Source of the DNA: Chlorokybus atmophyticus
Lineage: Eukaryota; Plantae; Mesostigma and Chlorokybus algae
NCBI GenBank assembly: GCA_009103225.1
Contig: RHPI01003516.1
Location: 86,062 to 150,061 of the forward strand
Direction: 5' to 3'
DNA: 64,000 nt
Shown here: in pieces, positions 24,401 through 58,934 of the stretch
Position numbering within the stretch: position 1 is the stretch's first letter
Layout of the letters: every line of letters starts with the position of its first letter
Notes under the pieces: generated by a model
The model's input: only the letters and a program-made list of their open reading frames with translations
What the model was told of the DNA's origin: nothing
Databases searched by the model: none
Position numbers and translations under genes: made by a program

Positions 24401-24520
24401 AGTGTTCCTGTCTCTCTCGCGTTTTGCAGCCATCAGCGCCCATCGGGCCGTGTAGCAGGCGCGGTAGTCCTGCTCCTTGTCTTCCTCCAAGCGTGCCATG
24501 CGTGCCATTAGGGCTGCCAT
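21173..24520 (-). CDS. G polyprotein middle part: Ala/Thr/Pro-rich region, unknown domain, aspartic protease and MTase motif I
   Basis: 1115-aa ORF with 'VMLDTGAQPVIIG' and 'VLELFGGIGSG'. It joins the pol frame if the tandem CATGAGG duplication (21324-21337) is collapsed. Confidence 0.9.
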   Translation of the reverse strand: MAALMARMARLEEDKEQDYRACYTARWALMAAKRERDRNTPSRVQPSRRARGEAATTLAGTSSEATSGAASAATATPATTSTPSTSALPTPVAPRPGTPVGTVTPTLVSTLAAAAITTESAPVGGALPTAAAPLSGGVETTLAPLTDTVATATMAIVEPAVSAATRAATLPALDVTQAVPTGQQAERAWETILRGADPTTIAFGRGGERTTRVARDDRVFPLPEVHTLPALTQHQLEDEILAGTAPPMRDRVFLISYSPPVVLELALQLFWALHNNMQTAPRQPARMPTTTFEPSPLDTYRDRRDAIQQRIADAADLPLGTDEALGPPTTARLHQRYHALEQAYHWRQDQAAAIAAREQALEATRAPIPQSPTAGPSSSTTPLFVGTNSDQARALAQQTRGVIAPLLPALVEDLPEDQREPGRGYLTPQGCTQRDGAGLVGEQQLRTALLRQATMLHRQEGIGLRQMLGMRDSGNAARARLVTWLVTNHPAVPLFAFGARIAWVDAFLRSIRQAYDEVASAATDTLEGALEAILSLPGVEAGRQRRRIATAYEQHVQQPETQLTVRTRAITVLEVGVVNGRWDAYMAVILRVPIITHDMRARLLRAVYLQPMPQNHRYIDADNNATATWEGTLVREAAHAVRWTYAEEQAAREAVPQTPGPPGFPPQPLATPPGMTTAVQRVNPPAPPLGQVAAAPPVPRPPRVYQQPRQGRFGQSRGQGGPQDPSGRGALAALRSGPADENKATVSPRKRFRRFKRLRINANAAMIANQGKHVTVNGRAPKCVMLDTGAQPVIIGRYLARDLGITSAELLPCPYQLDTATGNRDKVLGLTKQAVSIRLTGLNPSHSTEIVQRCVVTDAGSFDLLLGQDCNFPVGMGLDCWTEQAWFRPHWDEDDGEEQGFLPLELVAKDRSQRRSAAAATYSLTKSSRVPRARTQPRTTATSSSPSLNAEEDSPTPYDESQETVTKEVAFQEPSERRWSAQVAAHMLLTRPQLTAHFPAYKDQATVQDQYHIATGVVEFHMFRRRQGITVLELFGGIGSGLAAVLNTGTTVTKYLYCDPDPHASCTGSSEPSFTTAAPALPAAATAVGTAREPEGSTAGHPLDYQGSPAGSRQH

Positions 24521-31576: not shown

Positions 31577-36723
<5,147 letters not shown>

Positions 36724-37996
36724 CACACGGCTTGACGTTGAAGGACCATGCATGGTCCTTTCACGGACCCCGCGGACCATGCATGATCCGTACTCCACGG
36801 GCCAGGACTGCCTGGTCCGCGGGGGACGGACCGTTCCTGGTCCATTCGGGGCCCCGCGGCCCGTGAATGGCTGGCGCGGCGTCGCGCACCACGCATGGTC
36901 CGTGCCGCACCATCCATGGTGCGGCACGGACCAGTAACGTACGCTGGCCCTTGAACGCGGACCAGGTGCGGTCCCGCAGTCCTGTGGCCCTACTAGCACG
37001 CACCGTACATGGTACCGCACTGTCCGCGTCGCAACATGTACGTTCTGGCACGGACCAGTGACCGCGGCCCTGCCGCTATGTATCATGTATCATGAGTAGG
37101 TAGCAACCTATGCAAGGTACAATAGATTGCCTAACTGCCTGATTGCACAAGTGCACTTTATGTGTTGATTGACAAGCCGCACCGACTGTCGGCTATACAC
37201 CCGTGGACAGCCGCAAGTGCATAGCCGCAAATGGTCGGCGGCTGATTGACAGCCGGCCGGCTGTCAATCAAGCTGTAACGGGCTGTCTATGCAATCAACA
37301 TACTTCATAGTACCGTACGTGTATTTGCAAAAATTTGTGGACATGCACTATTAACATGTTCTATGCGTTTATCTAAGTATCTACGTATATATGAACATTA
37401 TACATGTGCATTGACGTATGCACATGTATAATGTTCATATACGTAGATACTTACATTATTATATATATTATAAAATACCTGTATATAAATGTTAGCGTGT
37501 GCACAAATGAATCTAATCGTATATGCATAGATACGCAGGTTAAGATGATTATATCAGTAGTATTTAGGTTGAGCCGTATACAAGGTATGTCTCATATAAA
37601 AATACGTACAAGAAGTATACATAAATAACGTTACTTATTATAATAGCCTCTTATGAGACCGCAGAATGGTTGACAGCCCCGACCAAGCATTGTGTCCAAC
37701 CAACCAGTAAATACCTACGTTGGTGCCGCAATGCGGTTTTAATATTTATATCATGTAAACGTATATATGTAAGTATACATGATATAAATACTTTATACAC
37801 AAATGCTTACATACATACACATGTAGGTGTGTGTATGCGCACGCAAGCAGGATGTTGACAACCCCTAACAAGGTTACATACTCATGGACAGCCCCCAACA
37901 AAGCATTGTAGTTTATAAATCTTGGCAGCCCCCGAGTTGCGGCTGTCTGTGTCATCAATAATGACCTAAAATAACATAATACCGTTGATTATGCTG
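36724..37996. mobile_element. CACAC-terminated EnSpm/CACTA-like element, long R arm
   Basis: Starts CACACGGCTTGACGTTGAAGGACC, is rich in GGACC/GGTCC subterminal repeats, and is colinear with 57074-58270. Confidence 0.8.
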
Positions 37997-38188: not shown

Positions 38189-39180
38189 CGATAGTGATAG
38201 TAATAGGGATAGTGCTCGACATAGTGACAGTAATAGTGACTGTTGTAGTGATAGTGGTAATGATAGTGATAGTTGTAGTGATAGCGATAGTGATAGTGGT
38301 AATGGTAGTGGTAGAAGTGGCCATTGTAATCGGGATAGGGCTTAAGATAGGGACGCTTATAGTAATAGTTATAGTGATAGTGGTACCGATAGTGATAGTC
38401 ATAGTAGTTGCTGTTGTCGTAATGGCAGTGATTGTAATAGGGCTTAAGATAGGGATATCAATAGTGATAGTTGTAGTGATAGTGGTGATGATAGTGATAG
38501 GGTTAGTGTTACATGGTAGTGGTGTTGTAGGGATAGTGGTAATGGTAGTGGTAGAAGTGGCCATTGTAATCGGGATAGGGGTTAAGATAGGGACACTTAT
38601 AGTGATAGTTATAGTGATAGTGGTACTGATAGTGATAGTCATAGTGGTAGCTGTTGTCGTAATGGCAGTGATTGTTTTAGGGCTTAAGATAGGGATATCA
38701 ATAGTGATAGTTGTAGTGATAGTGTTAGTGATACATGGTAGTGGTGCTTTTAGTGATGGGAATAGTGACAGTTGAAGGGACATCAATAGTAATAGTTGTA
38801 GTGATAGGGATAGTGGTAGCGATAGTGATAGCTGTAGTGATGATGGTAATTGTAGTGGTAGTATATGACAATTGAAATCGGGACCGATAGTGTAATGTAG
38901 TGGTGACAATTGTAATAGGGATAGGGTTTATGTTAGGCACATCAATATATAGTGATAGTTGTAGTGATAGCGATAATGATAGTGATAGTAATAGGGATAA
39001 TGTTGAACCTGTAGCATTGCATAGCATTGCATAGGGACATCAATAGTGATAGTTGTAGTGATAGTGGTAATGATGATAGTGGTAATGGTAGTGATAGCAA
39101 TAGTGATACAATTGTAATAGGGATAGGGCTTATGATAGGCACATCAATAGTGATAGTTGTAGTGATAGTGATAGTGATAT
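38189..39180 (+). repeat. (GATAGT)n-type minisatellite with a 240-bp higher-order duplication
   Basis: Trinucleotide/hexamer-based low complexity. The block starting near 38293 recurs exactly 240 bp later. Confidence 0.9.
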
Positions 39181-39580: not shown

Positions 39581-42500
39581 ATGGACATTGTTGATGTTAG
39601 CAATTCCTCTTGGACTTATTCCACTCAACAACTTTGTACATGGATTCAAGAACAACACATGTTTATTGAGGATATGGAATGTTGTGGTTTTTGTGGTATT
39701 ACTTTATTTGGTCAATCTCAGCGCAATAAAATGAGATTATATGATCTTAATCATGAAATACCTCCTTATGCTATTGCGAACATGTTTATGGCCGACTTTA
39801 CTCAAACATCCACTTCAATGCGTGTTTGTCAAACATGTCATAATAAGTCTTCACGCAGATATCACACTGTGATGTATTCTACTGAATACATGCGTAAAGT
39901 ACTATCTGAACATCCTATCGCCGTACTTAGGGCTTCTTAACACTTGTATTCGCTTGGACAATCAAGGCCCTCATAGCTACGGTGTCGGTATAATGGGGGC
40001 AAATTCTTTAATTAAAGGACCATTAATTGTGTGGGACAATTATTGTTTTAGCATTGATCAAGTTCCAGCATCACTTCATGAATTACTCAATGAGTTGCTC
40101 ACTAGCAATGCACATGTTAAAAAGTATTTAACCATGTTGGAATACCCTTCTATTTGTAGTGGGGTACCGGTTGCACATAGCAACATAGTTGAACATATTG
40201 TGCGAGAGCAATGCCGTCGTGGTTTGTTGAATGTCGTCAACAATGAGGAAAGATTACATGTTCTTACCACATTACTTCCTATTAGTACGCCTACCAACAA
40301 TTCACATGTACCTAACAATTTCATTGCTGGTGGATTAACTTGTCGGATTTGTAATGCTCAAACCATCTTACTTCATACTTCAGAGTCTAGTACAAATTTA
40401 ACCTTAACAATTGAAGATGCTTTATTCCCCATGCTATTTCCCCAAGGTGTTGGTAGTTTCAATGGTATACATGTACGTCATTTTACAGATTATATCCAGA
40501 TGCGGTGTTCCATGGCTTTTTCCATGTTCACTCTATATAAACCTTATATATTATTAATGTATCACATACGTCAAGCTTTGATGTTGGTTTCTCAATGCCG
40601 CACCATACTACTCAATAAATCAATTACGAAATATCGAAAAGATCATCCAAATGCTTCAGATGAAGATGCTATACGTCACATTATTAAGTATAAGATTCCT
40701 AATTCTATCATAGGATCACCCGCTTGGCATCGCACGCAATTGGGTGATTTACTTACTTTAGTTGATCATTGGGATATGCCTACATTATTTGTCACATTAA
40801 CTGCTGATGAAGTTAGTGAAACAAAATGGCCCGAGATTGTGGATGTTGAAAATTTTGTTAGTAATATTGGTATCAATTTCACATGGCGTGATGCACCAGT
40901 TGAATGTGCTAGATTATTTCATCATCGATTTACAGTATTTTTCCAAACTTACATCATGCGCAAGAAAATTTTGGGGTCCATGGAACATTACGTGATACGT
41001 TATGAAACTCAACATCGTGGATCTTTACATGCTCATGTTATGTTATGGTTGTGTCCAGATAGTGTTGAACGTGTTTCAAATGAAATTGTCGCATTCATTC
41101 CGGGACATTACGATGACAACACTGAAGCAATGGTTGCACCCACAGATGCACACCAACGTGTTTTGTATGAATATGTGCGGGAAAAACAATTACACATCTG
41201 TAGTCCTGTTGGAACTGGATGTCGTCCGTTCAATAGTGAATGCCGTTACGGTTTTCCATATGATATACAATCAGAGCGTATAGCAAAGTTCAATAGCAAT
41301 AGCAAACGTTATGACTATTATCGACCACGCTATCAAGATCGCAATGTTGTGCCTTATCACACATCCTTGCTGCTTTTATGGGGTGCACATTGTAATGTAC
41401 AAAAAGTAACTAACGATAATTGGTCTTTGTACATACTTAAATATACTATGAAAACCGAACCACTAGGTGCATTGAACATTAATATGGAAAATGCCAAGTC
41501 CTCGGGTCTTCATGGTCTTTCAGAAACAGAATTACGTTTTATCAGTGCCATGTATTTGTCCAAACCGTTAGCTCCTTCAGAAGCTGCCATGACTTGCTTA
41601 GAAATCCCTATCATACAAAAATCAAGTCGTGTGATTTACATTGATTCTCATATGCCTTCAGTGCGTACCAAGCTATTGCAAGGTGCTCAACATATTGTGA
41701 TACATTCAATTGACATTTATTGTGCATGACCACAGGCATTGGAGTTGGTGACTTTCTGCGATTACTTCCGTCAATATCATCGCACCAAAGCTGTGACCAA
41801 GTCAACACGGTACGTGCTTTCAAAAGACATCATAATTGATTCACTTGGTTATATTGTGAACCAACTACAAGAGCTACAAATTGTTAAGTTCACTGATTGT
41901 CATCTTGTGCATAACATGGAAGGATATTTTTTCAATCAGCTATTGGGCAAAGTTCATTTTAGAAGCGAACATGAGTTATTCAGCGATAACAATGAAAATC
42001 GTTCATATTATGAGGAATGCATTATACGCGGATATTTAAATGATGATACAAACACTTTAGAAGGGCATATTATTAACTATTGTACAAAACATTTATTTAC
42101 GGATTATCAAGTACAACAACTTCTTACACAAATGATTGAAAAACAATCTGTTGACACACCGGCACTTAACATCCCTAATACCGAGGAGTTACCTGTAAAT
42201 GAAGTTATAACGCAACAACAAATCGAAGCATTGGGGTACGTGAATGAATTTGAAAATATAGCTCTTGGAGTGTTAAGTCTTGAGCAACAATGCGTTTTTG
42301 ATCAAATAGTTTCACAACATACGGGTTTTCATGTTATATCAGGCACCCCCGGATCTGGAAAAACGTATCTAACCAAAAAGCTTACATATCATTTACGTAA
42401 TCAAGGGTTAAACGTGTTGCTATGTGCATCCACAGGAGCTGCAGCAATCCGGTTAAGTACAACAGCACGCACTGTTCATACAGCATTTGCAATGCCTTGT

Positions 42501-43538
42501 GCTGGCACTTTTCTACCATATTTATCACCAATAGACACACGTTATGTTATTATGAATGCTACTCAAATATTTATTGTTGACGAATATTCCATGTTAACGG
42601 CTGAGATCATCAATTTAATATTTTTACGGGTACAACAACTATATGACCCTACAACATTTCTGGAAAAGGTTCAAATCATATTTGTTGGTGACCATAAACA
42701 ACTACCACCAATTTGCAAACATAGTCGTGGTGAAAACATACAACCGTGTGACAAGTGTCATAGTGGACATAGTCGTTATTGGCATGTAGGTCACAAACAT
42801 ATACTCAATACTTCCATACGTCATGACTCAGATCAAGAATACTTGAGATTTTAAAATGTGATTCGCAGTGATGTACCATCACAAACTCTAGTAGACGACA
42901 CATTACATACTTGTATCATGAACGGTTCATGGGAAAGCAATTTTATTGCGGATACTATCACAATCTGTTCTCATGTCCAAGATGTCATATACTATAATGA
43001 TAAAGCCATCCGTCAATTATTTTCAAAAGATGACATATATGATATCATTTTATATAGTAATGGTATCAATAAAGCTGACCTGACAGACTGGATCAATGAA
43101 CCTAAATTTCATATGTTAACATCAGTTGCACTACATGCTAAAGTAATTTTGCTGGCAAATTTGGATTTAAACATTGGTGCTGCCAATGGTGCTATGGGAG
43201 TTGTAACAAAATTACGCTTCTATCGGACACGTATATCAGCTATTGAAATATGCTTGAAAGACACTCAGAAAACAATTGTGATTACACGCTCCACATATAA
43301 AACACACACTCACAAAGGTCGTTCTTTTTACAAGTCAACATTTCCATTACAATTAGCGTATGCAATCACAGGCCATAAAGTACAAGGTGCTACTCTTAAT
43401 ACTCCAACCATCATCAATATGAGACATGCATTTGTCCCAGGTTTGTGGTATGTTGTATTGTCCAGAGTGACTAACCGTTCTTTGTTGACATTGACGGACA
43501 TGCCTCAAGCCACTGACATGCAACCTATACCTTGGTAA
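39581..43538 (+). pseudogene. Helitron-type RepHel: Zn-finger, HUH Rep and PIF1/SF1 helicase
   Basis: Motifs CGFC..CQTC, 'PTLFVTLTAD', 'RGSLHAHVMLW', 'YILKY', 'GTPGSGKT', 'IVDEYS', 'GDHKQLPP' and 'FPLQLAYAITGHKVQGATL..YVVLSRV'. One frameshift near 39945 and in-frame stops at 41727 (TGA) and 42852 (TAA). Confidence 0.93.
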
Positions 43539-43643: not shown

Positions 43644-44471
43644 ATGGCGACCTTCGACTCTCGCGCCATTTTCAAAAAAGTCAAGACTCAGCATGAAGCG
43701 TCCCCAGATCAACGCAAGCGCCCACGCGTGGATGCTTGGGAGCTCTCTAACGCTCAAAAGCTTCTCCTCGACAACAACGGTGTACTCCCAGAAGACTACG
43801 ATGGCATACCATTTACAAAGTCTGAAGCCGACATTTTTATCAAAGATGTCATTCGCTCCAGTGACAAGTTTAAGCAAGAGCACGGAGTTGGCATCATCAC
43901 GGGTACTTATTGATTAAATTTAATTACAACAACTCGTCAACGTCATGTTATTAATACATTGCGTGTGAAATGTGTATTAGGTGGTTGCAAGTATTTCATG
44001 AAAATGTTGGGACATGACCTTCCCTCCAACACCAAACGCACCATTGCCTATGCGGCTTGGAACCAAGTGTTCGCTGAGCTCAATCTCAAGCTCCAAGAAT
44101 CGGGACAGAAGCCAATTCGCGCCCAACAGATGGTTGAGTTGGTGATCATCTACAAAGCGTGCTCATTTGAAGAGGCCAAGGATCTATCCGATGGCGAGGC
44201 TGCTGATTATCTGGACGCCATCCATGAGCAAGACCCCAAGTACAAAAAAAAAGACAACACAACATCGGATGAGGTATATACCATCATTTGAACTATAACA
44301 TTCACACTACAAATACAACTCTGTCGTGCATAAAACATGTGTCATATGCAGGTTGCGAGCGAGGTGCGTGCCTTACTCAATAATAGTCGCATTAATGCTA
44401 CTTTGGCTCTTCCTGCAACACCCTTATCCAAAGCCACTCGCAGCAACCGTGTCGCAAGCGCAAAACCATGA
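43644..44471 (+). CDS. Three-exon gene of unknown function (223 aa)
   Basis: Exons 43644-43902, 43981-44273 and 44352-44471. Both GT-AG introns are 78 bp with compatible phases, and the spliced frame is open. Confidence 0.7.
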
Positions 44472-44820
44472 AGGCTAGTCATGGCTTTGTGTACTTACTA
44501 CGACATATACATGAAGGCAAAGTTTATATAGGACAGACAAGTAACCTAGTGCGAAGATTTCACGAGCACCGACGTCACCCACCCCGCAAGCTGCAGCAAG
44601 ACTTGGACATGGCTCAACCATTTGCAAACCAAGTTGAGATGCGTTCACTCGGGTGGGCTTCAACTAAGGATGAGCTGGATACATTAGAAGCCAAATTCAT
44701 CCAGGAGTATAACTCAGTGGACCAAATGGCTACAATGTGGATCAAGGCAACCCAGCAAAGTTCAAGGCATTTTGGGCACGTTGGCGTAGAAATTCTCATT
44801 TTGGTAGGAAATCACGTTGA
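44468..44820 (+). pseudogene. GIY-YIG endonuclease with one frameshift
   Basis: 'FVYLL...VYIGQT....RRFHEH...LEAKFI'. A 1-nt shift near 44717 restores '..GPNGYN..' and a stop at 44820. Confidence 0.85.
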
Positions 44821-44940
44821 ACAATACCATGGTAGTTGTATTGATCTTATGGTTTTAGCATAATGTTCGCAAATCGCACATTAAACAATACCATGGTAGT
44901 TGTAGTGATTTTATGGTCTGAGCATAATGTTTGCAAAGTC

Positions 44941-45880
44941 ATAGATTACCACTATCACTACATCTATCACTATCAGTATCACTATCATTTCCACTGTCAC
45001 TACAACTATCACTATACGTGTACCTATCCCCACCCCTATCCATATTACAATTGTTACTTGCTATCACTACAACTACCACTATCGCTACAACTACACTTAT
45101 CACTAGCATTACCTCTATCACTAGCATTACCACTATCACTACAACTATGCCTATCGGAGTCCAGCTTTAACCTTCTCCCTATTATTATCACTACCATTAC
45201 CACTACATCTACAACTATGGTTATCACTATCATTACCACTATTACTATAACTATCACTACAAGTGCCCCTATCTTTAGCCCTATCGATATTACAATTGTC
45301 ATCTGCTACCACTACCACTATCACTACACCTACCACTATCAGCACCCCTACATGTATCACTAACACTGTCATCTCCACTATCACTACAACTATTGGTTAC
45401 CCACTCTTAAGCCGGATCCCTATTACTATCCCTATTTCTATCACTACCATTACCACTATCACTACAACTATCACTACAACCATCACTATCATTACCACTA
45501 TCACTACAACTACCACTATCAGAGTCACTATTACTGTCCCTGTGTCGAGCACTTTAATATCACTACAACTAACACTGCCACTACAACTACCACTATTGAT
45601 GCCCCTCAAAGGTCACTATCCCTGTCACTACCATTACCACTACCTTTGCCACTACCCCTATCACTACCACTACATCCTTTGTTCCCTATCATTAATACGC
45701 CCCATCTTCTACCCCTACTCCTACCCTACCCCCTTGTGATTCATACCTATCCCTACACATACACCTACCCCTACCCCAATCACTACAACCCCTACCTTGC
45801 TACTACCACTAGTAGTATTATTATGATATTTCTAACTGTCATGAGCATTTCAACAATTACCACAACTACAATTCGCATAA
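44941..45880 (-). repeat. (ACTATC)n minisatellite, inverted relative to 38189-39180
   Basis: Reverse complement shares units such as GACAATTGTAAT and GATAGGGCT.AAGATAGGG with the upstream array. Confidence 0.85.
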
Positions 45881-46025
45881 TGCATTGACTGATAATCATC
45901 ATGCAATGTAAGTTATACATGAGTCTCTTGCAATGACTTCACAACCACATGTGATAATACATTGTCAATCACATTAATGCCATAGTTACAACTCATACAA
46001 TCATTTGTCCCGAGCAAATACAATA

Positions 46026-46720
46026 TCATTTTACCAACTTAGCTACCACGTGCAGCAACACGCGACAGATCTGTACATACAGAATATTAGAGCAAAACGA
46101 GATAAATCAACCATTGTTTAAGATAGACACATTACTAAGCTCTAATTTGTCTTCCTTGCCGCGATGATCGCGTGGCAATGCTCGCAACTCTTTAGTCATC
46201 TTGAAAACTTCACCGACACTTTTTGGAGCAACAAAGTCCATTGCCAACTTCACGCATGACTACAATGCACACATAAAATCAATAGAACAAGACCGACATC
46301 AACACAGCTTAGCAAAACAATACACCAATCACTTTACCTTCAGATTGCGAACCTGATGTGGACATCCAGCATGAATAAATATAGCATCCCCGACATACTG
46401 GACAATACGCCAAGGTGTAACACCTACAAAACAACAATTAAAGATAAAATAATTATGTACAATTAATCAATTATAATTACTTACACTCTTCGTCCAACCA
46501 CTATCCTTACCATATTGTTCTTGCAGTTCCAATAGATGTTCAACGCGCAAATAAAAAGTTTGGTCATGAATGGGATCGATCACCTACACCAACCAACTCA
46601 TTGTTAAACACCTACTCAACAAAACTCATTCAAATGAAGGCGCTGACAATACATCACTACCTCTTGTAAAGGGAGGTTGTGTAGATGGCGAAACCGATGC
46701 TTGTTTGCGATCAGATATGC
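46026..46720 (-). pseudogene. KDM3/JMJD1-type JmjC histone demethylase, C-terminal part (5 exons)
   Basis: Exons ~46720-46661, 46583-46511, 46423-46338, 46259-46140 and 46070-46026 splice to 'YLIANKHRFRHLHNLPLQEVIDPIHDQTFYL...[42 protein letters not shown]...LPRDHRGKEDKLE'. The last donor reads CT instead of GT. Confidence 0.92.
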
Positions 46721-46721
46721 A

Positions 46722-47082
46722 CGGCTTTCCAAGCCACGCCTCCTAAGGCTTAGTATACGCGGAGTTCTCGCCGTTCTCCCAGGCGTTGGCTGCGTCAGGC
46801 TGCGCCAGCCTCATGAGCAAGTCTGGAGTCTCCTGCTTGGTCATACTCCGCGTAGTGAACTTGATATCCGCAACAGACTTATGACTGATCGATATCAACT
46901 CTTACTAGTAGCGGTATCTCGAAGGCTCATGCCTTAGCCAATTTACAAGCTGATTGGACCAAGCAGTATGCAAGACATGCTCAGGCTAACACTCCCATGC
47001 AGGCAGCTTGGTAGACTCCAAGTCCTCTAGTGCAGTCATGGAACTTCTTCGTCACCAAAGGCTTGGTCATGCAGTCAGCCAT
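46722..47082 (-). mobile_element. Copia 3' fragment E: RNase H end, PPT and truncated LTR
   Basis: 'MADCMTKPL..KKFHDC..GLG', then GCATGGGAG, then an LTR starting TGTTAG at 46991. Confidence 0.75.
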
Positions 47083-50000
47083 TGTTAAAGGACTAGCATG
47101 CACATTTAGTTGAGGCAAGCATGGACACACAGAGACAGAGCTACCGCCACCAGAGCATACACAAGTCACATCACATTTATCTATTACAAGTTGTCCGCTG
47201 GTTCTTATACCAGCTAGTTACACACACGTGTACGTTTGCAAGCACTGCGTAAGCTATACTCAGCTTTTTAACGCGCTCTAAGCTGCGTTGTCTTGCTTAC
47301 AACTAGAGCTTTCCAACAAGCTCTTACACGCCTAATATGAGTAAGTATACGCGGAGATACGAAGCAATTAATAAGGCTCCGGTCTAGAGTCCGGAGTCTG
47401 GTCCGACGACGCCATCTTGCTAAGTCCGGACCTAGTGCTCGTCCTTACGACCTTTTACTCCTGTGTGAAGGGTCGATGCTGATCGTATGTAGGAATGACT
47501 CTCAACGTTCCCACGCGAGCAGATTGACCTCCAACGCTTGCTCCTGTAGTCAAACACAGATGCCAAGTCCTGCGCAACAAGTCTTGAACTTGAGCGGTGA
47601 CAATGGCTTTGTCATGAAGTCCGCCAGCATGCCCTTGGTGTTGCAGTACTGGAACTCCACCTCCTTCCTTGTGACTCTGTCACGCACAAAGTGATGCATG
47701 ACATCAATGTGCTTCGTCCTTGCCGAGGCAATAGGGTGCTTCAACAACTCGATGGCTCCTTGGTTGTCCCAGTTAATGACAGTGCACGCCATGGGGTGCC
47801 CCAAGTCTGCCATGAGCTTGCGAAGACAGAGTGCCTCCTTCACTAATGCTGCCGCTGCCATGTACTCAGCCTCTGATGTAGATGCTACTGTTGTTGGCTG
47901 CAACCTGCTGTTCCAGCTCACCACGCCTCCGTTCAGCTTGAAGACGTAGCCTGTAGTGGACCTCCTGCTTTCGAGGTCACCAGCAAAGTCCAAGTCGCAG
48001 TAGCCCTCCAACTCAGTGCTCCCGCTCCTAAACTTAATGCCGACTATTGCGCTCCCAGCTACATAGCGAAGTACTCCCTTTGCTGCTCTCCAGTGCTCCA
48101 TGTTCGGTGCAGACATGTAGCGAGCAAGTACTCCGACATCATGTGCAACATCGGGACGTGTGCACACTGCCAGATATAGCATGTTGCCTACGAGCTCACC
48201 ATATGGATACTGAGCCTTGTCGAATACCTCCTCATCCTTTGCGTTGATGAGGGCAGTGCCAAGTGCCAGCGGTGTGGTCTTGGTCTTTACATCAGTGAGC
48301 CCGAACTTGGTGACGAGTCTTCTCACCATTTGCTCATGACTGATCTTGATTGTGCGAGCAGCCCTGTCGCGCTCAATCACCATGCCAAGGAACCACTTAG
48401 CCTCTTCAAGATCACGAACTGAGAATGCTTGCTGTAGCGCAAGTTTCGTCTCCTGCAGGTGGTGCATATGCCTGGCGGTGATGAGAATATCATCCACACA
48501 CACGAGCAGCCAGACCTTTTTGTCTAAATGGAAGAAGAGCCCAGGGTTTGCAAAGGATGCGGTGAAGCCAAGTGCCTCCAGCTCCTTGGTGAGCTTGATG
48601 TGCCACATACGCGGTGCCTGTCGCAGCCCGTACAGTGCCTTTATTAGCTTGCACGCTGTGCCTCTCTCCCCTTCTTCATATCCAGGTGGTTGCTCGATGA
48701 AGGTCTCCTCCTCCAGTTTTTCGTAGAGGAAGGCAGTCTTCACGTCGAGGTGATACAGCTTTAGGTCCTCAGCAGCAACCACGGCTAGGAGTGCACGGAA
48801 GGTGGTATGTTACTTGCAGGTGCAAACGCTTAAGTAAAGTCCACCCCTTCCTGCTGCAAGAAGCCCTTTGCCACCAGTCTTGCCTTGTTTCGCTCAATGT
48901 TGCCCTGACCATCACGCTTCACCTTAAAGACCCATTTCACTGGAATGGTCTTCACTCCTTGCGGTAATTGCTCTAAAAACCAAATGTTGTTGGCATGGAG
49001 TGACGCAATCTCCTCGTCCATAGTACGCTGCCATTGCTCCGCATCTGGTGCTAACAATGCCTCCTCGTAGGTGCTTGGCTTCTCATTGTGCACACTAGCG
49101 ACGTGCTTTGTGTAAGAAGTCACGTGCCTTTCTCTCCCTCACTGGGTATCTCCGAGCTGCGTGCTCCTGCTGCAGGTACGGCTCCTGCTGGCCTGCTACA
49201 GCTGAGTCCTGCTCACCCTTGATGTTGATGATGGCCTTGCATGTAGCCTCTACTGTCTCAGGATGCTCCTTTGGCTGTGCTTCATCTTCAGGAAAGAAGC
49301 CGGCTTCTGGTTGTGATAATTCCTCGTGGAAAACCATCTCTGCTCACGATAATCTTCTGAGTGTCCTCGAGCAAGGTTCTGTAAGCCTTGAAACCCGGTG
49401 CATAGCTGACGAAGATGCCCTTCTTGCTGACCGGCTCCAGCTTGTGCCTGAGCTGTTTAGGCACTAGTGTATATGCCGTGCATCCAAACACACGCATACC
49501 ACTCACATCTGGTGTTGCTCCATAGAAGTGCTCCCATAGAGTTTTCTGCTCTGAGCTCACCGGAGACCTGTTGCGGATGTCGATGGCAGCGAGTATCGCC
49601 TCCTTCCACATACTGTCTTCCATCTTTGTGTCATTGAGCATGGCTCGAACACACTCCAAGAGTGTCATGTTGAGGCGTTCAGCTGCTGCATTGTGCTGCG
49701 GGGTGTAGGGTGCCGTTGTCTCGTGGCGTATGCCCTTGCTGGTGAAGAACTCCTTCAAATCCTTGTTGATGTACTCCCCTCCTCGATCACTGCTCATTGC
49801 CTTCATCTTGTTGCCAGACTGAGTCTCCAGCAAGGCCACAACTGTGCGCACAGCTCCAGCAACTTTTGACTTCAGTGTCAACGGAAAGATGACGGATAGC
49901 TTGCTGTAGTTGTCGAGGAATGCAGCAAAATACCTGACCCCTCCCTTCGCCACAATGCACATAGGGCCATAGACATCCATGTGCACAAGCTCGCAAGGAT

Positions 50001-51990
50001 GCTGACTACTAAAAGAGGATGATGGGAATGGCATAGCATGCTGCTTTGCAACCAGGCATGGTTCACAAAGTGCACTCAATGCATTCTTGAGTTCTTTTGT
50101 GCTGGGATGGATGCCCTTGACCATCTTCTCAGCGACAAGGCGAGTGAGGTTGACATAGCTGACATGCCCGAACCTTCGATGCCACAATGTTGGCGACTCC
50201 TTGTCTTTCACCACCATAGCTTGAATGTCAATGTCCCAAGAGTGCTGCTCCACGTGGGTGAGCCCTCCCAGATCAGCGATTCCAACCATGTGCACGACCC
50301 CATTAAGGATGACTGTGCAGCCACCCTTCCGGAACACTATCTCTGCTCCCAAGCGCTCAGCAACTCTTACAGAGAACAGACTCGCAACAGCCTTTGGAAC
50401 ATGCAGGACGTGTCGTAACAACACCTCTCGCTGTGTGTTACCAACATTGCACAGAAGTCGCACATTGCCAACTCCCTCAGCCACTAGTACTTCACCACCA
50501 AAGCCCGCCACCTTGATTAGGGACGTCAGCTTCCTGTAGCCCTCCATCACCTCCTTGTTTGGTGTGAGATGACGATCGCAGCCAGAGTCCACCACCCAGA
50601 GAGCTGTGCCCGCCCTCGAACTGGATGCAGTGAAGGCGACATGTTTCTACTCGTGTTGGTGCTCGTTGCCGCTGTTGCTGGTGCTTGCTCTAGGTTGCCC
50701 ATGTTGTTTCTTTCTACAGTCCTTCACAATGTGCCCCTTCCAACTATACCAATGGCATGTGAGGTCTTTGTGACGAGGATTGCTCGGCTTGTTGCCCTTG
50801 TTCTTCTCTTCATGGTTGCTCTTCTTTCCATGCTTGTTGGTGTAGAAGGCCACGGCATTAGCTTGCTCATCCTTCTTCACAACCCTCTGCTCCACGGTGA
50901 GCAGCTTCGGTAGCACATCGTCAAACGTCAACTCCGATGATGACGTCTCCAGCAGGGTTGCGACGACCTCGTACTCTGCTGGTAGCCCTGCAACAATGAC
51001 CAGCACTACCTCCGTCTCCCCCATGTTGTGGCCGACGTTGATGAGGTCTGCCCAAAGCTCTCTTGCGCGTGCAACATACTTCGTAATAGGTTCTGCTGCC
51101 TCCTTCCTGAGTGCGCTGAGCTGCTTGCGTAGATGCAACTTTCTGGCATTGTTCTTGGTCCAAAAAACGGCTGATAGCTTTTCCTAAGCTTGTCTACCAT
51201 CTTCACATGCAGTGAGCATGGGAAAGTGATGCGGTTTGCTGTTCAACACAAGCAAAGAGTGTGCTTCTGCTGAATGCTCTGACCACATAATGTTCGCTCC
51301 TGGTGTTGATGGTGGTGCCTTCGGATCAACGTACTTCCACACCTTACAGTGGATGAGCAAGGCCTTCATCTCCACGCACCATGTGTTGTAGTTGTCGGTG
51401 TTCAGCTTTGCAATCTGCCCCTTGTCGTAGGTCGCCTCCATCTTTGTCGTGCCTGCCTTCACAGTTGACACCCAAGGCTCTGCTACCAACAAGCTACCGT
51501 AGTGTAGAACTATTATGCACACAAGCTAGTCTCACACTCCTCAAGCGTAGTGTGGGCCTATAACCTATTGAAGGACTAGCATGCACATGGAGTTGAGGCA
51601 AGCATAGACACACAGAGACAGAGCTACCGCCACCAGAGCATACACAAGTCACATCACATTCATTTATTACAAGTTGTCCGCTGGTTCTTATACCAGCCAG
51701 TTACACACACGTGTACGTTTGCAAGCACTGCGTAAGCTATACTCAGCGTTTTGACGCACTCTAAGCTGCGTTGTCTTTCTTACAACTAGAGCTTTCCAAC
51801 AAGCTCTTACACGCCTATTATGAGTAAGTATACGCGGAGATACAAAGCAATTAGTAAGGCTCCAGTCTAGAGTCCGGAGTCTGCTCCGACGACGCCATCT
51901 TGGTAAGTCCGGACCTAGTGCTCGTCCTTACGACCTTCTACTCCTGTGTGGAGGGTCGATGCTGATCGTATGTAGGAATGGCTCTCAACA
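47083..51990 (-). mobile_element. Ty1/copia element B, full length but decayed
   Basis: 425-bp LTRs at 47083-47507 and 51566-51990, PBS GGTTATAGGCCCAC, and gag/IN/RT/RH ORF pieces. No matching TSD. Confidence 0.93.
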
Positions 51991-54208
51991 AACAACCATT
52001 TCATATCTGGTGGACACTGGTTCTAATTCAGAAAGGGAGCTCAGCCTTAAAAAAGTGAGCAGCGCTGCGCGCAGAGATGAGAGGAGTCATCAGCAGCAGC
52101 AAACCCAACAGCAAGGCAGGGGGCAGTATCCTGGGCGCGACAGGAAGGGTCATGTTCGTTTTCATAAGGGATTTGGCTGTATGGCGAGCTCAGATTCACA
52201 AAGTGTGGAGCCAGCGACATATGAAGCACTCCTGAGGACTGATGCAGACAGCTGGCGTTAGGCAATGGATGAAGAGATAGCCTCGCTGCATGCCAATGTC
52301 AATGTCAATTAGCTAATGTCAATCAACATGGGAACTTGAACTTCCACTTGCAGGGGTCAAGCCTATTCCTGTCAAGTGGGTGTTCAAGGTGAAGAGGGAC
52401 GGCAATGGCAACATTGAAAGGTACAAGGCCAGATTAGTTGCCAAAGGGTTTCTGTAGGCAGAAGGAGTTGACTTCAATGAGGTGTTTGCACCGGCGGGGA
52501 AGTTGGCAACCTTCAGAGCTATGGTAGCATACAACCTAGAGTTCCATCACTTGGATGTCAAGCCATCTTGTGTCAGCATACAACCTAGAGTTCCATCACT
52601 TGGATGTCAAGCCATCTTTTCTGTATGGGGAGCTGGAAGAGAGATTGTACATTCAGCAACCAAGAGGGTATCCGGAGGGGCCACCTGGTACAGCGTGCGA
52701 ATGGGTGAAGGCATTGTATGGCTTGACGCAGGCACCATGGGTGTGGCATGCAAAACTGTGCAAACAGCTCCAAAAGCAGGGGTTTACTGCAAGTTTGGTA
52801 GATCCAAGCTTGTTCTACCACGAGAGCAAGCAAGTGTGGCTGTTGGTGTACGTGGACGACGTTTTAATTGCAGCGTCCGGAATGTCAGGGGTGCAGCGAG
52901 TGAAGACTCTGCTGCAGGCTGTGTTCGAGTGCAGAGACTTAAGCGAGACAACATACTTTCTCAACATGGTTGTCACCAGAGATTGAGCTGCTGGAACCAT
53001 CGCCATTACGCAAGAGCAAGCGGTGAAGCAGTTGGTGACAAATTTTGGTCTGGACAACGCGAATGTCAGAGAGGTGCCACTGAGCGTGGGAATTCAGTTG
53101 GTGAGAGCACTGGACAGTAACAAAGAGCTGGACAAGGCAAAGTATTCCTACTGCGAACTTGTGGGGAGCCTTTTCTACCTGTCCATAGCGTCTTGACCTG
53201 ACATTGCCCATGCTGTGGGACAATTGGCAAGGTACATGTCAGCTCCAACAATGCAGCATTGGTTAGCAGCAAAGGGAATACTGCGCCACATGTCAAGGAC
53301 AGCAACAATTGGCATCTGGTATGGGCGGGGCAACTAGGAGTTGCAAGGCTACTGTGATGCAGATTATGCTGGTGACCTAGATACCAAAAGGTCAACCACT
53401 GGATATGTCTTCAAGCTAAATGGTGGAGTGATTAGCTGGAACAGCAAGCTGCAACCAACAGTGGCAGCTTCCACCACAGAAGTAGAGTACATGGCCTCTG
53501 CAGCAGCGACAAAGGAGGCGTTGTGGCTTAGGATATTGCTAGGAGACCTTGGTCATCCATGTGGAAGCGTGGAGATGCGATGTGACAATCAAGGAGCAGT
53601 CAAGCTACTGAAGCACATCCCATTCTCTCGGCAAGGAGCAAGCACATTGATGTGCACCACCACTTTGTGAGAGACTGAGTGGCGAGGAATGAGATTGAGT
53701 TTGTTTTCTGTGGCACTGAAGAGATGCTGGATGACTTCATGACGAAGGGACTGCATGTGAAGAAGTTCAAGGCATGCTGTGAAGGATTGGGCATCGGGAC
53801 AGTGAAGATGAAGACAAAGAAGACCAAGTCCTAAATTCAGAGCTGGCCAAGCTGCCTGCGTGGGAGTGTGGAAAATACAGCATGTTATGCAGTGTTCTCT
53901 ACATGTATAGCATATGACACTTATGTGCTATTGTCCAGTCAGCTTAGCTAGCCCTATTGTAGCTTATTATGCTGGTACTTGATAAGATACTCATAGATTG
54001 CAGTTGTATGTATAAGATGCAAGCAGTTACGACTGGTACAGTCTAGTCTGCTCTTTGGTAAGACCCAGACTGAGGGCCCAGAGCGGACAGGCCGCGGGTT
54101 ATTGTTAATTCACTTCTCTGGTCGCTTCGTTGGCGGCGTAGCTCTGCTCTTACCACTGTGCTGTGTATGCTTGTTGTGCATGGTTGCATGCAGCATCTTT
54201 AGTCAACA
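51991..54208 (+). mobile_element. Copia C-family 3' half: RT, RNase H and 3' LTR
   Basis: 'YVDD' and '[20 protein letters not shown]' motifs, a PPT, and an LTR at 53867-54208. Confidence 0.88.
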
Positions 54209-55170: not shown

Positions 55171-57024
55171 CACACCGATTGACGTCAAAGGACCATAAAT
55201 GGTCCGTACCCTCGAACCGGGATTTTCCCCTGCTAAGTGAATTCCGTGGACCATGTCTGGTTGGACTGTCATTGACAGTCCGACCATGCATGGTCCAAAA
55301 CTCACGTGAACGGTCCCATGTTTTTTTGGGGTCGCACCATGTCTGGTCCGGCCTGTTTACGGTCGCGTCAGGACCAGGTACGAGCCAGTCAGCGGACCAG
55401 GGATTTAACAATAACATTTAGTTTAACAATCATTACTGGTCCGGCCAGCGGACCATTGACCGCAATATTTATTCATAAGCATCAGATGTAATGCAAATGA
55501 CGGAAAAGTGCTCTTGAGCCGGCAGCACCGGCCACGCCCGACCTGCGGGGCCGCAGGCTGCAGCGCACGAGGCCGCGGCGTCTTAGAAATGTTTAGTGAA
55601 ACGCATGCATCCACCGAGAGTCGAACCCAAGACCTTTGGAGTACGAACACGACAACCTAACCACTAAGCTACATGTGCACGTACCGGTAGGGACGGTGCA
55701 GTACTTGCATAATAGACTGTACCGACGGCCGCTTGGCGACTGTCGGCGGCGGAAATTGCACAGGAAGTCGGCGTTGTGAATTGACAGGCCCATAGGCAGT
55801 GCATGCGCTATCAATGTGCATAGGCTGTACCAGTATCAATCCACGGTATCACATTATTTTTCGTCATTATTGATGACACAGGCAGCCGCAACTCGGCGGC
55901 TGCCAAGGTGTGTAAACTGCAATGATTTGTTGGGGGCTGCTCATGAGTATGTAACCTTGTTTGGGGTTGTCAATATCCTGCTTGCGTGCGCACACACACT
56001 TCATGTGTATATATGTAAACATTCGTATATATATACATATACACGTTTACATGATATAAATACGAAACGACGAGCATTGCGGCACTACTGTAGGTATCTA
56101 TTGGCTGATTGGACACAATGTTTGGTCGGGGCTGTCAATCATTCTGCGGTCTCATAAGAGGCTATTTTAACAAGTGACGTGACTTATGTATACTTTTTAT
56201 ACGTATGTTTACATGAGACATACCTTGTACACGGCTCACCCCATAATACGGCTGATATAGCCATTTAATATGCTTATAAAGTTTAGATCCATTTGTGCAC
56301 ACGCTAACATTCATATATATATGTATCATATGTTATACATTAAATGGTTGTATATACGCAGATACTTGGATAAACGCATAGAACATGTTAATGGTGCATG
56401 TTCACAGATATTTGCAAATACACGTACGGTACTATGAAGTATGTTAATTGCATAGACAGCCCCTTACAGCTTAGTTGACAGCCGGCCGGCTGTCAATCAG
56501 CTGCCGACCATTTGCGGCTATCCACTTGCGGCTGTCCACGGTGTATAGCCGACAGTCGGTGCGGCTGTCGGCTATGCACGCCGTCAATTAACACGTTAAG
56601 TGCACTTGTGCAATCAGGCAGTTAGGCAACCTATTGTACCTTACGTAGGTTGCTGCTACCTACTCATGATAGCGGCAGGGCCGCGGTCACTGGTCCGTGT
56701 TGCACCGTACGTAGTGCGGCGCGAACCCGTGCGGCACCATGTACGGTGCATGCTGTAGGGCCACAGGACTGCGGGACCGCACCTGGTCCGCATTCAAGGG
56801 CCAGCGTACAGTACTGGTTCGTGCCGCACCATAAAAGGTGCGGCACGGACCATGCGTGGTGCGCGTCGCCGCGCCAGCCCTTCACGGTCCGCGGGGCCCC
56901 GAACGGACCAGGAACGGTCCGTCCCCCGCGGACCAGGCAGTCCTGGCCCGCGGGGGACGGATCATGCATGGTCCGCGGGGTCCGTGAAAGGACCATGCAT
57001 GGTCCTTCAACGTCAAGCCGTGTG
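55171..57024 (+). mobile_element. Non-autonomous CACAC element, copy 1 (1.85 kb)
   Basis: Imperfect TIRs CACACCGATTGACGTCAAAGGACC / CACACGGCTTGACGTTGAAGGACC, GGWCC subterminal arrays, and no ORF. Confidence 0.88.
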
Positions 57025-57073
57025 TTACCACGGGTTGCCTCTCGCATTCCTTAAAGCGCTTCACCACGCTCCA

Positions 57074-58934
57074 CACACGGCTTGACGTTGAAGGACCATG
57101 CATGGTCCTTTCACGGACCCCGCGGACCATGCATAGTCCGTACCCCACGGGCCAGGACTGCCTGGTCCGCGGGGGACGGACCGTTCCTGGTCCGTTCGGG
57201 GCCCCGCGGCCCGTGAAGGGCTGGCGCGGCGACGCGCACCACGCATGGTCCGTGCCGCACCATCCATGGTGCGGCACGAACCAGTACTGTACGCTGGCCC
57301 TTGAATGCGGACCAGGTGCGGTCCCGCAGTCCTGTGGCCCTATTAGCATGCACCGTACATGGTGCCGCACGGTCCGCGCCGTACTATGTACGGTGCAGCA
57401 CGGACCAGTGACCGCGGCCCTGCCGCTATCATGAGTAGCAGCAACCTACGTAAGGTACAATAGATTGCCTAACTGCCTGATTGCACAAGTGCACTTAACG
57501 TGTTCATTGACGGCGTGTATAGCCGACAGCCGCACCGACTGTCGGCTATACACCGTGGACAGCCGCAAGTGGATAGCCGCAAATGGTCGGCGGCTGATTG
57601 ACAGCCGGCCGGCTGTCAACTAAGCTGTAAGGGGCTGTCTATGCAATTAACATACTTCATAGTACCGTACGTGTATTTGCAAAAATCTGTGAACATGCAC
57701 CATTAACATGTTCTATGCGTTTATCTAAGTATCTACGTATATATAAACATTGGATATATATCATATGATACATATATATATGAATGTTAGCGTGTGCACA
57801 AATGGATCTAAATCTTATAAGCATTTTAAATGGCTATATCAGCCATATTATGGGGTGAGCCGTGTAGAAGGTATGTTTCATGTAAACATACGTATAAGAA
57901 GTATGCATAAGTCACGTCACTTAAATTAAAATAGCCTCTTATGAGACCGCAAAATGATTGACAGCCCCGACCAAATATTGTGTCCAATCAGCCAGTAGAT
58001 ACCTACATTAGTGCCGCAATGCTCGTCGTTTCGTATTTATATCATGTAAACGTGTATATGTATATATGTACGAATGTTTACATATGTACACATGTAGGTG
58101 TGTGTATGCGCACGCAAGCAGGATATTGACAACCCCAAACAAGGTTACATACTCATGAGCAGCCCCCAACAAAGCATTGTAGTTTACACACCTTGGCAGC
58201 CGCCGAGTTGCGGCTGCCTGTGTCATCAATAATGACGTAAAATAATGTGATACCGTGGATTAATACTGGTACAGCCTATGCACATTGATAGCGCATGCAC
58301 TGCCTATGGGCCTGTCAATTCACAACGCCGACTTCCTGTGCAATTTCCGCCGCCGACAGTCGCCAAGCGGCCGTCGGTACAGTCTATTATGCAAGTACTG
58401 CACCGTCCCTACCGGTACGTGCACATGTAGCTTAGTGGTTAGGGTGTCGTGTTTGTATTCCAAAGATCTTGGGTTCGACTCTCGGTGGATGCATGCGTTC
58501 TTCACTAATCATGTCTAAGACGCTGCGGCCTCGTGCGCTGCAGCCTGCGGCCCCGCAGGTCGGGCGTGGCCGGTGCTGCCGGCTCAAGATAGAGCACTTT
58601 TCCGTCATTTGCATTACATCTGATGCTTATGAATAAATATTGCGGTCAATGGTCCGCTGGCCGGACCAGTAATAATTGTTAAACTAAATATTTTTGTTAA
58701 GTCCCTGGTCCGCTGACTGGCTCGTACCTGGTCCTGACGCGACCGTAAACAGGCCGGACCAGACATGATGCGACCCCAAAAAAACATGGGACCGTTCATG
58801 TGAGTTTTGGACCATGCATGGTCAGACTGTCAATGACAGTCCAACCAGACATGGTCCACGGAATTCACTTAGCAGGGGAAAATCCCGGTTCGAGGGTACG
58901 GACCATTTATGGTCCTTTGACGTCAATCGATGTG
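57074..58934 (-). mobile_element. Non-autonomous CACAC element, copy 2, inverted relative to copy 1
   Basis: Reverse-complement homolog of 55171-57024 over its whole length, separated by a 49-bp spacer. Confidence 0.88.
58421..58493 (+). other. 73-nt tRNA-like segment with Pol III A and B boxes (also at 55606-55678 and 62474-62546 on minus)
   Basis: A box TAGCTTAGTGG, B box GGTTCGACTC and a T-arm that pairs. The anticodon stem does not pair. Confidence 0.65.

What the first reader, a model, noticed from the sequence alone, without database searches (positions are those of the whole stretch)
46026..46720. H3K9-demethylase-type JmjC gene beside Helitron genes inside a transposon arm
Seen: five minus-strand exons, invisible in the ORF track, splice into the C-terminal JmjC region of the KDM3/JMJD1 family (HPIHDQ-like, [19 protein letters not shown]). 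The third metal-binding His is kept. The 5' part is lost at a junction with a truncated copia LTR. Intron sizes (69-87 bp) and AT content match the neighbouring 3-exon gene. Established: this family includes plant IBM1/JMJ25-type enzymes that remove H3K9 methylation. Inference: transposon-borne anti-silencing cargo rather than a host gene.
Basis: partly seen in the sequence, partly recalled or inferred. Interest (0 to 1): 0.85.

Follow-up and report, generated by a model that had tools for sequence, protein, structure and literature searches.

The report
Dead demethylase gene stub beside Helitron
This is the broken-off tail end of a plant-type histone demethylase (KDM3/JmjC) gene lying next to a dead rolling-circle transposon in a green-algal transposon graveyard; this copy cannot work, but it adds one more case of this gene travelling with that transposon family.

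Summary
Five minus-strand exons (46026-46759, four GT..AG introns of 77/87/78/60 nt) splice into 143 codons. These align without breaks to the C-terminus of land-plant JMJ25/26/27-type KDM3 demethylases (50-60% identity). All four intron positions match an angiosperm KDM3 gene.

Only the last third of the JmjC domain is present. The third iron-binding His (PHQV) is kept. The HxD pair, the 2-oxoglutarate site, the zinc finger and any usable start codon are missing, and no other KDM3 piece lies in the window. Homology stops inside an exon at about 46720-46731, against a truncated copia LTR.

The stub sits 1.2 kb from a GIY-YIG gene and 2.5 kb from a RepHel that carries two in-frame stops. It shares their AT-rich composition (GC3 0.42, against 0.56-0.72 for the retroelements). 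No Helitron end lies in between.

This copy is therefore an inert remnant. That it belonged to the Helitron is likely but not proven here, because the element's 3' end is gone. Linkage elsewhere rests on earlier scan notes (s1-078879, s1-078798, s1-078894), which found the same Helitron-KDM3 pairing on other DNA of this genome. Anti-silencing is inference only; no RNA data exist.

The parts
46026..46070 (-). JmjC fragment exon 5 (ICRVLLHVVAKLVK, stop TGA 46026-46028)
   Evidence: It aligns with the plant KKM.VYA..LVK tail. The intron position is shared with the Cuscuta gene.
46131..46259 (-). Exon 4 (SCVKLAMDFVAPK...KEDKLELSN), the KDM3-specific C-terminal motif
   Evidence: PDB KDM3B/JMJD1C E 3e-3. 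440 hits among 1.84 billion proteins.
46338..46423 (-). Exon 3 ([29 protein letters not shown]), carrying the third Fe-binding His; the conserved Pro of FIPAG is His here
   Evidence: Pfam JmjC positions 78-104 of 114, E 3e-6. KDM3B E 7e-7. A contig of run X1 covers 46332-46427 at 92% identity and reads Pro at this codon.
46511..46583 (-). Exon 2 (VIDPIHDQTFYLRVEHLLELQEQY)
46661..46730 (-). Partial exon 1 (..ESRAYLIANKHRFRHLHNLPLQE). KDM3 homology starts at about 46720. The frame stays open upstream to 46810 but holds no ATG.
46731..46991 (-). Truncated 3' LTR of an older copia. It starts TGTTAG at about 46991 and has no terminal CA at the junction with the JmjC exon.
   Evidence: PPT/LTR-start motif shared with three copia copies. 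Multi-copy contigs of run X1 stop matching at 46731.
46984..47082 (-). C-terminal end of the older copia pol (MADCMTKPLVTKKFHDCTRGLGV..)
   Evidence: Translation. It resembles the end of the young copia pol ORF.
47083..51990 (-). Younger complete copia (LTRs about 425 nt, 95% alike), with no matching target-site duplication
   Evidence: Pfam RVT_2, rve, gag_pre-integrs.
45674..46025 (.). AT-rich spacer (38% GC) between the JmjC stop codon and the minisatellite; no terminal hairpin
44945..45673 (.). 12-nt-unit minisatellite, the inverted partner of 38191-39179
44468..44863 (+). GIY-YIG nuclease ORF (131 aa). Its ATG overlaps the stop of the spliced gene upstream (ATGA).
   Evidence: Pfam GIY-YIG E 1e-11. 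A homologue lies behind a related RepHel in L001.
43645..44471 (+). Three-exon gene of unknown function (introns about 76 and 75 nt)
   Evidence: Read from the sequence.
39954..43538 (+). Helitron RepHel (Helitron_like_N plus PIF1 helicase): one frame with two in-frame stops at 41727 and 42852
38191..39179 (.). Left minisatellite array, inverted relative to 44945-45673

Best explanation
The stretch is the inert 3' remnant (last about 130 codons, five exons) of a plant-type KDM3/JMJ25-like JmjC histone-demethylase gene.

Shown:
- The gene structure is that of an ordinary streptophyte nuclear KDM3 gene; all four intron positions are shared with an angiosperm.
- The gene is cut inside an exon at about 46720-46731, where it abuts a truncated copia LTR.
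- The HxD iron ligands, the 2-oxoglutarate site, the zinc finger and any start codon are gone.
- The neighbouring RepHel is also dead, with two in-frame stops.

Inferred:
- Before the break, the gene was the convergently oriented cargo module of the AT-rich Helitron block. That block runs minisatellite, RepHel, small spliced gene, GIY-YIG, inverted minisatellite, then JmjC.
- It was copied as DNA from a host KDM3 gene.
- In intact copies it could remove H3K9 methylation and so weaken the H3K9me/non-CG DNA methylation loop that silences the element.

A deletion or recombination among nested copia elements then removed the gene's 5' two-thirds together with the Helitron's 3' end.
For: - KDM3 identity.
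- Continuous alignment, with the HxD (LHCD in plants) lying upstream of the break.
- No other KDM3 piece in the 64 kb.
- Intron positions identical to Cuscuta campestris KDM3 (L003).
- No ATG in the open frame before exon 4.
- RepHel domains and in-frame stops.
- Composition: GC3 is 0.42 for JmjC, 0.42 for GIY-YIG and 0.28-0.31 for RepHel, against 0.56-0.72 for copia and gypsy. The spacer and introns are 25-39% GC, and GC jumps to 51% at the LTR.
- No hairpin or Helitron terminus between GIY-YIG and the JmjC stop.
- Junction and truncated LTR.
- A 92%-identical exon 3 in run X1 has unalignable introns, two synonymous changes and the canonical Pro where the window has His. A better-kept copy therefore exists in a close relative.
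- Leads only: earlier notes report the same Helitron-KDM3 pairing at several other places of this genome.
Against: - No Helitron termini could be defined, so 'inside the element' is not demonstrated.
- No second copy of this family could be fetched. The protein and metagenome searches were blank, so I did not test linkage elsewhere myself.
- The window holds no host gene, so the composition argument has no host comparator.
- Another KDM3-type gene is reported 16 kb away at 63160+ (s1-184045), so a local host gene cluster is possible.
- A related RepHel + GIY-YIG contig (L001) shows no JmjC, but it ends about 1 kb past the GIY-YIG gene.
- No RNA run exists.
Confidence: 0.6

Rival explanations
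1. It is the remnant of a host KDM3 gene, perhaps a local paralogue of the gene starting at 63160. Nested copia insertions and recombination destroyed it, and the Helitron merely landed or was left next to it.
For: The window is a pure transposon nest. The break is at a copia LTR. The gene has ancestral plant introns. A second KDM3-type gene is noted nearby.
Against: The AT-rich composition is continuous with the Helitron block and unlike everything else in the window. No element end lies between GIY-YIG and the gene. Earlier notes report the same pairing repeatedly elsewhere, though these are unchecked.
Confidence: 0.22
2. The Helitron picked up only a gene fragment, and perhaps the LTR piece with it, as maize-type Helitrons do. 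No complete demethylase was ever carried by this lineage.
For: Only the C-terminal third is present. It is joined to another foreign fragment, the truncated LTR.
Against: Run X1 contigs of the LTR family diverge from the window exactly at 46731, so the junction is not seen as a repeated unit. Earlier follow-ups describe longer KDM3 genes in sister copies (unchecked).
Confidence: 0.13
3. The stub is still used, for example as an LTR-driven transcript giving a short peptide or a regulatory RNA against KDM3 paralogues.
For: The old LTR lies directly upstream in the same orientation. The frame and all the splice sites are intact.
Against: There is no ATG before exon 4 and no HxD. Positions conserved from human to plants are changed: FIPAG to FIHAG, HPIHDQ to DPIHDQ, DFVSPE to DFVAPK. 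No RNA data exist.
Confidence: 0.04

Closest known systems
Land-plant KDM3/JHDM2-group JmjC demethylases (JMJ25/IBM1, JMJ26, JMJ27)
   Same: 50-60% identity over the C-terminal 115-130 aa. Same motifs ([30 protein letters not shown]). Same four intron positions as a Cuscuta KDM3 gene.
   Different: Only the last third of the JmjC domain is present. There is no HxD, no zinc finger and no start codon. 21 of 67 columns that are at least 90% conserved in angiosperms are changed, including residues that human KDM3B shares with them. The setting is AT-rich and next to a transposon.
Fungal Helitrons and other DNA transposons encoding TET/JBP dioxygenases (PMC12730594)
   Same: A Helitron that carries a gene for a Fe/2-oxoglutarate dioxygenase able to erase a silencing mark. 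An escape-from-silencing role is proposed there too, also by inference.
   Different: There the enzyme acts on 5mC/6mA in DNA and the hosts are fungi. Here the enzyme is a histone H3K9 demethylase type in a streptophyte alga, and the copy is truncated.
DNMT-bearing retrotransposons of Klebsormidium and Symbiodinium (PMC5890265)
   Same: A transposon carrying a host-derived chromatin or methylation enzyme. One such gypsy (DNA_methylase + PHD in pol) lies in this same window at 17164-24520.
   Different: That enzyme is a writer fused into a retroelement polyprotein. This one is an eraser-type gene with its own introns, on the opposite strand of a DNA transposon.
Gene-fragment capture by plant Helitrons (for example maize); own knowledge
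   Same: Host gene DNA with introns found beside or within a Helitron.
   Different: Those captures are usually non-functional multi-gene mosaics in non-autonomous elements. Here sister copies are said to hold a whole gene next to RepHel.

Membership tests
KDM3/JHDM2 JmjC demethylases | JmjC (cupin) domain detectable by profile | tested here: met
   Exon 3 matches Pfam PF02373 positions 78-104 of 114, E 3e-6, 28 bits against a cutoff of 24. Only the C-terminal third of the model is covered.
KDM3/JHDM2 JmjC demethylases | Complete Fe(II) triad H-x-D ... H | tested here: not met
   The third His is present (PHQV). The HxD (LHCD in plant homologues) lies upstream of the break and is nowhere in the window.
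KDM3/JHDM2 JmjC demethylases | KDM3-specific C-terminal extension (SC.K.A.DFV.P ... EDKLE) | tested here: met
   Exon 4 against KDM3B/JMJD1C structures and 440 library proteins; alignment.
KDM3/JHDM2 JmjC demethylases | N-terminal zinc finger (zf-4CXXC_R1/RING type in plants) before the JmjC domain | tested here: not met
   tblastn with 12 full-length homologues finds nothing upstream of 46744. The Cuscuta homologue has the zinc finger.
KDM3/JHDM2 JmjC demethylases | Gene structure shared with plant KDM3 genes | tested here: met
   The four introns fall at the same places as in Cuscuta campestris L003.
KDM3/JHDM2 JmjC demethylases | H3K9me1/2 demethylase activity | not testable with these tools
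   Needs an intact copy and an enzyme assay. This copy cannot have the activity.
Helitron (autonomous) | Rep (HUH) domain plus PIF1-type helicase in one protein | tested here: met
   Helitron_like_N E 4e-24 and PIF1 E 5e-20. The frame has two in-frame stops.
Helitron (autonomous) | Defined termini (5' TC, 3' hairpin + CTRR) enclosing the cargo | tested here: inconclusive
   No terminal hairpin between 44800 and 46100 or between 37950 and 39600. The 3' end is presumably lost beyond 46731. There are no sister copies to align.
Helitron cargo gene | Same gene linked to RepHel in several independent copies | not tested
   Known only from earlier scan notes. My own searches for other copies were blank.

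The most novel reading that the evidence does not exclude
This is one decayed copy of an autonomous Helitron family of a streptophyte alga. The family carries a complete, host-derived KDM3/IBM1-type H3K9 demethylase gene as regular cargo, beside its GIY-YIG nuclease. It uses that gene to strip H3K9 methylation and escape silencing. This would be a histone-level counterpart of the TET/JBP genes of fungal transposons.
Probability: 0.25. Interest if true: 0.75.

Novelty: new variant of a known kind. Interest (0 to 1): 0.42.

Why it matters
Transposons that carry enzymes acting on silencing marks are few: DNMTs in retroelements, TET/JBP in fungal DNA transposons, VANC-type anti-silencers. The 19 papers in the searchable library that mention both Helitron and JmjC, judged by their titles and abstracts, do not describe a transposon-borne histone H3K9 demethylase.

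If the family-level reading holds, it would give a testable case of a transposon attacking the histone arm of plant-type silencing in a close algal relative of land plants. This copy by itself is a pseudogene. Its value is as one more linked copy, and as evidence from the conserved introns that the gene was taken from a normal nuclear KDM3 gene as DNA.

Tried and rejected
- Search for the missing 5' half on the far side of the copia elements: tblastn with 12 full-length KDM3 proteins found nothing elsewhere in the window. The young copia has no matching target-site duplication, so its flanks are not contiguous.
- Search for sister copies or the genome's own proteins:
  - RepHel gave only relatives at 45% identity or less, from other algae and metagenomes.
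  - The GIY-YIG ORF gave nothing.
  - Exon 4 in JGI metagenome contigs gave nothing.
- RNA support: no RNA run holds the stretch. The three runs laid were contigs, and only X1 matched.
- Two contigs with related RepHel (L001, L002): L001 has a GIY-YIG homologue but neither has a JmjC. Both end too soon to decide.
- Conserved-column count (21 of 67 changed): rejected as a test of decay, because all the comparators are angiosperms.
- 'Giant CACAC-ended element': rejected. That repeat occurs at 55.8-58.3 kb without Helitron parts.
- Searches used wrong frames or coordinates and were corrected.

Full report
**What is there.** On the minus strand, five exons splice through four GT..AG introns of 77, 87, 78 and 60 nt into 143 codons, ending in TGA at 46026. 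The exons are 46661-46759, 46511-46583, 46338-46423, 46131-46259 and 46026-46070.
- Exon 3 alone matches Pfam JmjC (positions 78-104 of 114, E 3e-6) and human KDM3B structures (E 7e-7).
- Exon 4 alone matches KDM3B/JMJD1C (E 3e-3) and 440 proteins of a 1.84-billion-protein library.
- The spliced product aligns at 50-60% identity over 115-130 residues with the C-termini of full-length proteins.
- Every one of the 20 best matches I looked up is an angiosperm protein. Where they carry a family name it is JMJ25-, JMJ26-, JMJ27-like or lysine-specific demethylase 3B.
- The alignment runs straight across the first three exon joins, so the exon model is right. The fourth join has a 3-residue insertion.

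**Origin of the gene.** I fetched the genomic locus of a Cuscuta campestris homologue (L003) and mapped its exons. Its introns fall at PLV|VHPIHDQ, EEYG|VEAW, RNLK|SCIK and KEDKLEV|KKM. These are the same four places as in the window. The fragment therefore descends from an ordinary intron-bearing streptophyte nuclear KDM3 gene, copied as DNA. It is not a retrocopy and did not come from an intronless foreign source.

**What is missing.**
- In the plant proteins the HxD iron ligands (LHCD) lie 150-250 residues upstream of the first aligned residue.
- Homology in the window begins only at ..AYLIANKH.. (about 46720), in the middle of what is a long exon in Cuscuta.
- tblastn with 12 full-length homologues finds no other KDM3 piece anywhere in the 64 kb.
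- The frame is open upstream to 46810, but it contains no ATG before exon 4.
- The third metal-binding His (PHQV) is present. The assignment follows established knowledge of KDM3B, and one search shows the aligned motif. It is useless on its own.
- Several residues shared by human KDM3B and over 90% of the plant homologues are changed: FIPAG to FIHAG, DFVSPE to DFVAPK, and the Phe of EF[KR] before LP to Leu. HPIHDQ to DPIHDQ is likewise changed relative to the plants.

**The junction.** Directly upstream on the minus strand lie two pieces of an older copia.
- The last 33 codons of its pol (47082-46984..ADCMTKPLVTKKF..GLGV).
- The start of its 3' LTR. The PPT/LTR-start motif at 46988-47010 is shared with three other copia copies in the window.

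Contigs of a related organism (run X1) show this LTR family to be multi-copy and stop matching the window at 46731. No TG/CA terminal dinucleotide is present there, and the other copia LTRs in the window are about 425-460 nt against 261 nt here. Both the LTR and the gene are cut at one breakpoint, which points to deletion or illegitimate recombination rather than a clean insertion. A younger complete copia (47083-51990, LTRs 95% alike) sits in the older one. It has no matching target-site duplication (gccat against aacaa), a further sign of rearrangement.

**Neighbourhood.** The window is entirely transposon-derived. To the low-coordinate side of the fragment lies an AT-rich block (37-44% GC against about 50%). 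In order it holds:
- a 12-nt-unit minisatellite (38191-39179);
- RepHel on the plus strand (39954-43538), with Helitron_like_N at 4e-24 and PIF1 at 5e-20, in one frame with two in-frame stops;
- a three-exon gene of unknown function (43645-44471);
- a GIY-YIG ORF that overlaps it by ATGA (44468-44863, E 1e-11);
- the same minisatellite inverted (44945-45673);
- a 352-nt spacer;
- the JmjC fragment, convergent with RepHel.

GC3 is 0.42 for the JmjC fragment, 0.42 for GIY-YIG and 0.28-0.31 for RepHel. It is 0.56-0.72 for the copia and gypsy ORFs. The JmjC introns are 25-39% GC, and GC jumps to 51% at the LTR. No hairpin or other candidate Helitron terminus lies between GIY-YIG and the JmjC stop codon. 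Composition and layout thus place the fragment in the Helitron block. The block's 3' end is gone, so enclosure between termini cannot be shown.

**Other copies.** I could not fetch any.
- The genome's own proteins are not in the searchable collections, and the metagenome scan was blank.
- Run X1, whose contigs mostly match at 90-99% and so probably come from a close relative, holds a 181-nt contig covering exon 3 at 92% identity. Its flanks, which are introns here, do not align. Of its three listed differences, two are synonymous by my own codon reading. The third turns the window's His codon back into the Pro conserved from plants to human. A better-preserved copy therefore exists, and the window's copy has drifted.
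- A metagenome contig with a 40%-identical RepHel (L001) has a GIY-YIG homologue downstream. The nuclease is thus an old partner of this Helitron lineage. The contig ends before any JmjC could appear.

**What the scan found before.** Earlier notes on this genome report the same Helitron-KDM3 pairing on other DNA.
- Three of them had follow-ups that concluded 'dead Helitron carrying a KDM3-type demethylase gene' (s1-078879, s1-078798, s1-078894).
- Several more had no follow-up (s1-180949, s1-079775, s1-174169, s1-192619).
- Another note puts a KDM3-type gene at 63160+ of this window, running off its edge (s1-184045). Within the window I see no KDM3 homology there and no second RepHel.

These notes are leads that I could not test. 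They are the main reason I rate 'cargo' above 'host remnant'.

**Mechanism.** Shown: this copy is inert. Inferred: intact sister copies would encode a Fe(II)/2-oxoglutarate dioxygenase of the group that removes H3K9me1/2 in plants (IBM1/JMJ25; established knowledge). Expressed from the element, it could weaken the H3K9me/non-CG methylation loop that silences transposons. The analogy is with TET/JBP genes carried by fungal Helitrons and other DNA transposons (PMC12730594) and, conversely, with the DNMT-bearing retroelements of Klebsormidium (PMC5890265). One of the latter lies in this window. The 19 papers in the library that mention both Helitron and JmjC, judged by their titles and abstracts, do not describe a Helitron-borne JmjC gene.

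**Verdict.** As an object, this is a pseudogene stub in a transposon nest. As a member of a recurring Helitron-KDM3 association, it is a modestly useful extra data point, and it adds the conserved-intron evidence for DNA-level capture from a host gene.

Noticed in passing
window 17164-24520 (-): The pol of a gypsy-type retroelement holds a C5 DNA methyltransferase segment (PF00145, E 4e-10) before the RT and a PHD finger at the C-terminus. This is the charophyte DNMT-retrotransposon type of PMC5890265.
   Followed up: partly
window 38191-39179 and 44945-45673: Two arrays of a degenerate 12-nt minisatellite, in inverted orientation, bracket the RepHel / unknown gene / GIY-YIG module. They may be spacers between gene modules of this Helitron family.
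   Followed up: partly
L001:15738-16037 (+), metagenome contig ERZ25071359: A GIY-YIG homologue (31% identity, E 3e-8) lies about 1.4 kb behind the helicase of a RepHel only 40% identical to the window's. The RepHel-GIY-YIG pairing is therefore old.
   Followed up: partly
window 47083-51990: A complete copia with LTRs 95% alike but no matching target-site duplication (gccat against aacaa). This suggests recombination between copies.
   Followed up: partly
window 36723-37991, 55838-57025, 57073-58262: A repeat beginning CACACGG occurs three times (82% alike). Two copies lie head to head and form the centre of a 3.8-kb palindrome. It is not joined to Helitron parts at 55-58 kb.
   Followed up: partly
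window 44813-44937: A 61-nt tandem duplication (89% alike) that begins within the last codons of the GIY-YIG ORF and runs past its stop, just before the minisatellite.
   Followed up: no
window 52526-52618: A perfect 44-nt direct repeat with a 5-nt gap, inside a plus-strand copia RT fragment.
   Followed up: no
window 39581-39950: A Cys-rich N-terminal stretch (CCGFCG..CQTCHNK) upstream of RepHel in another frame. It is probably a zinc-finger exon joined to RepHel by an intron or a frameshift.
   Followed up: no
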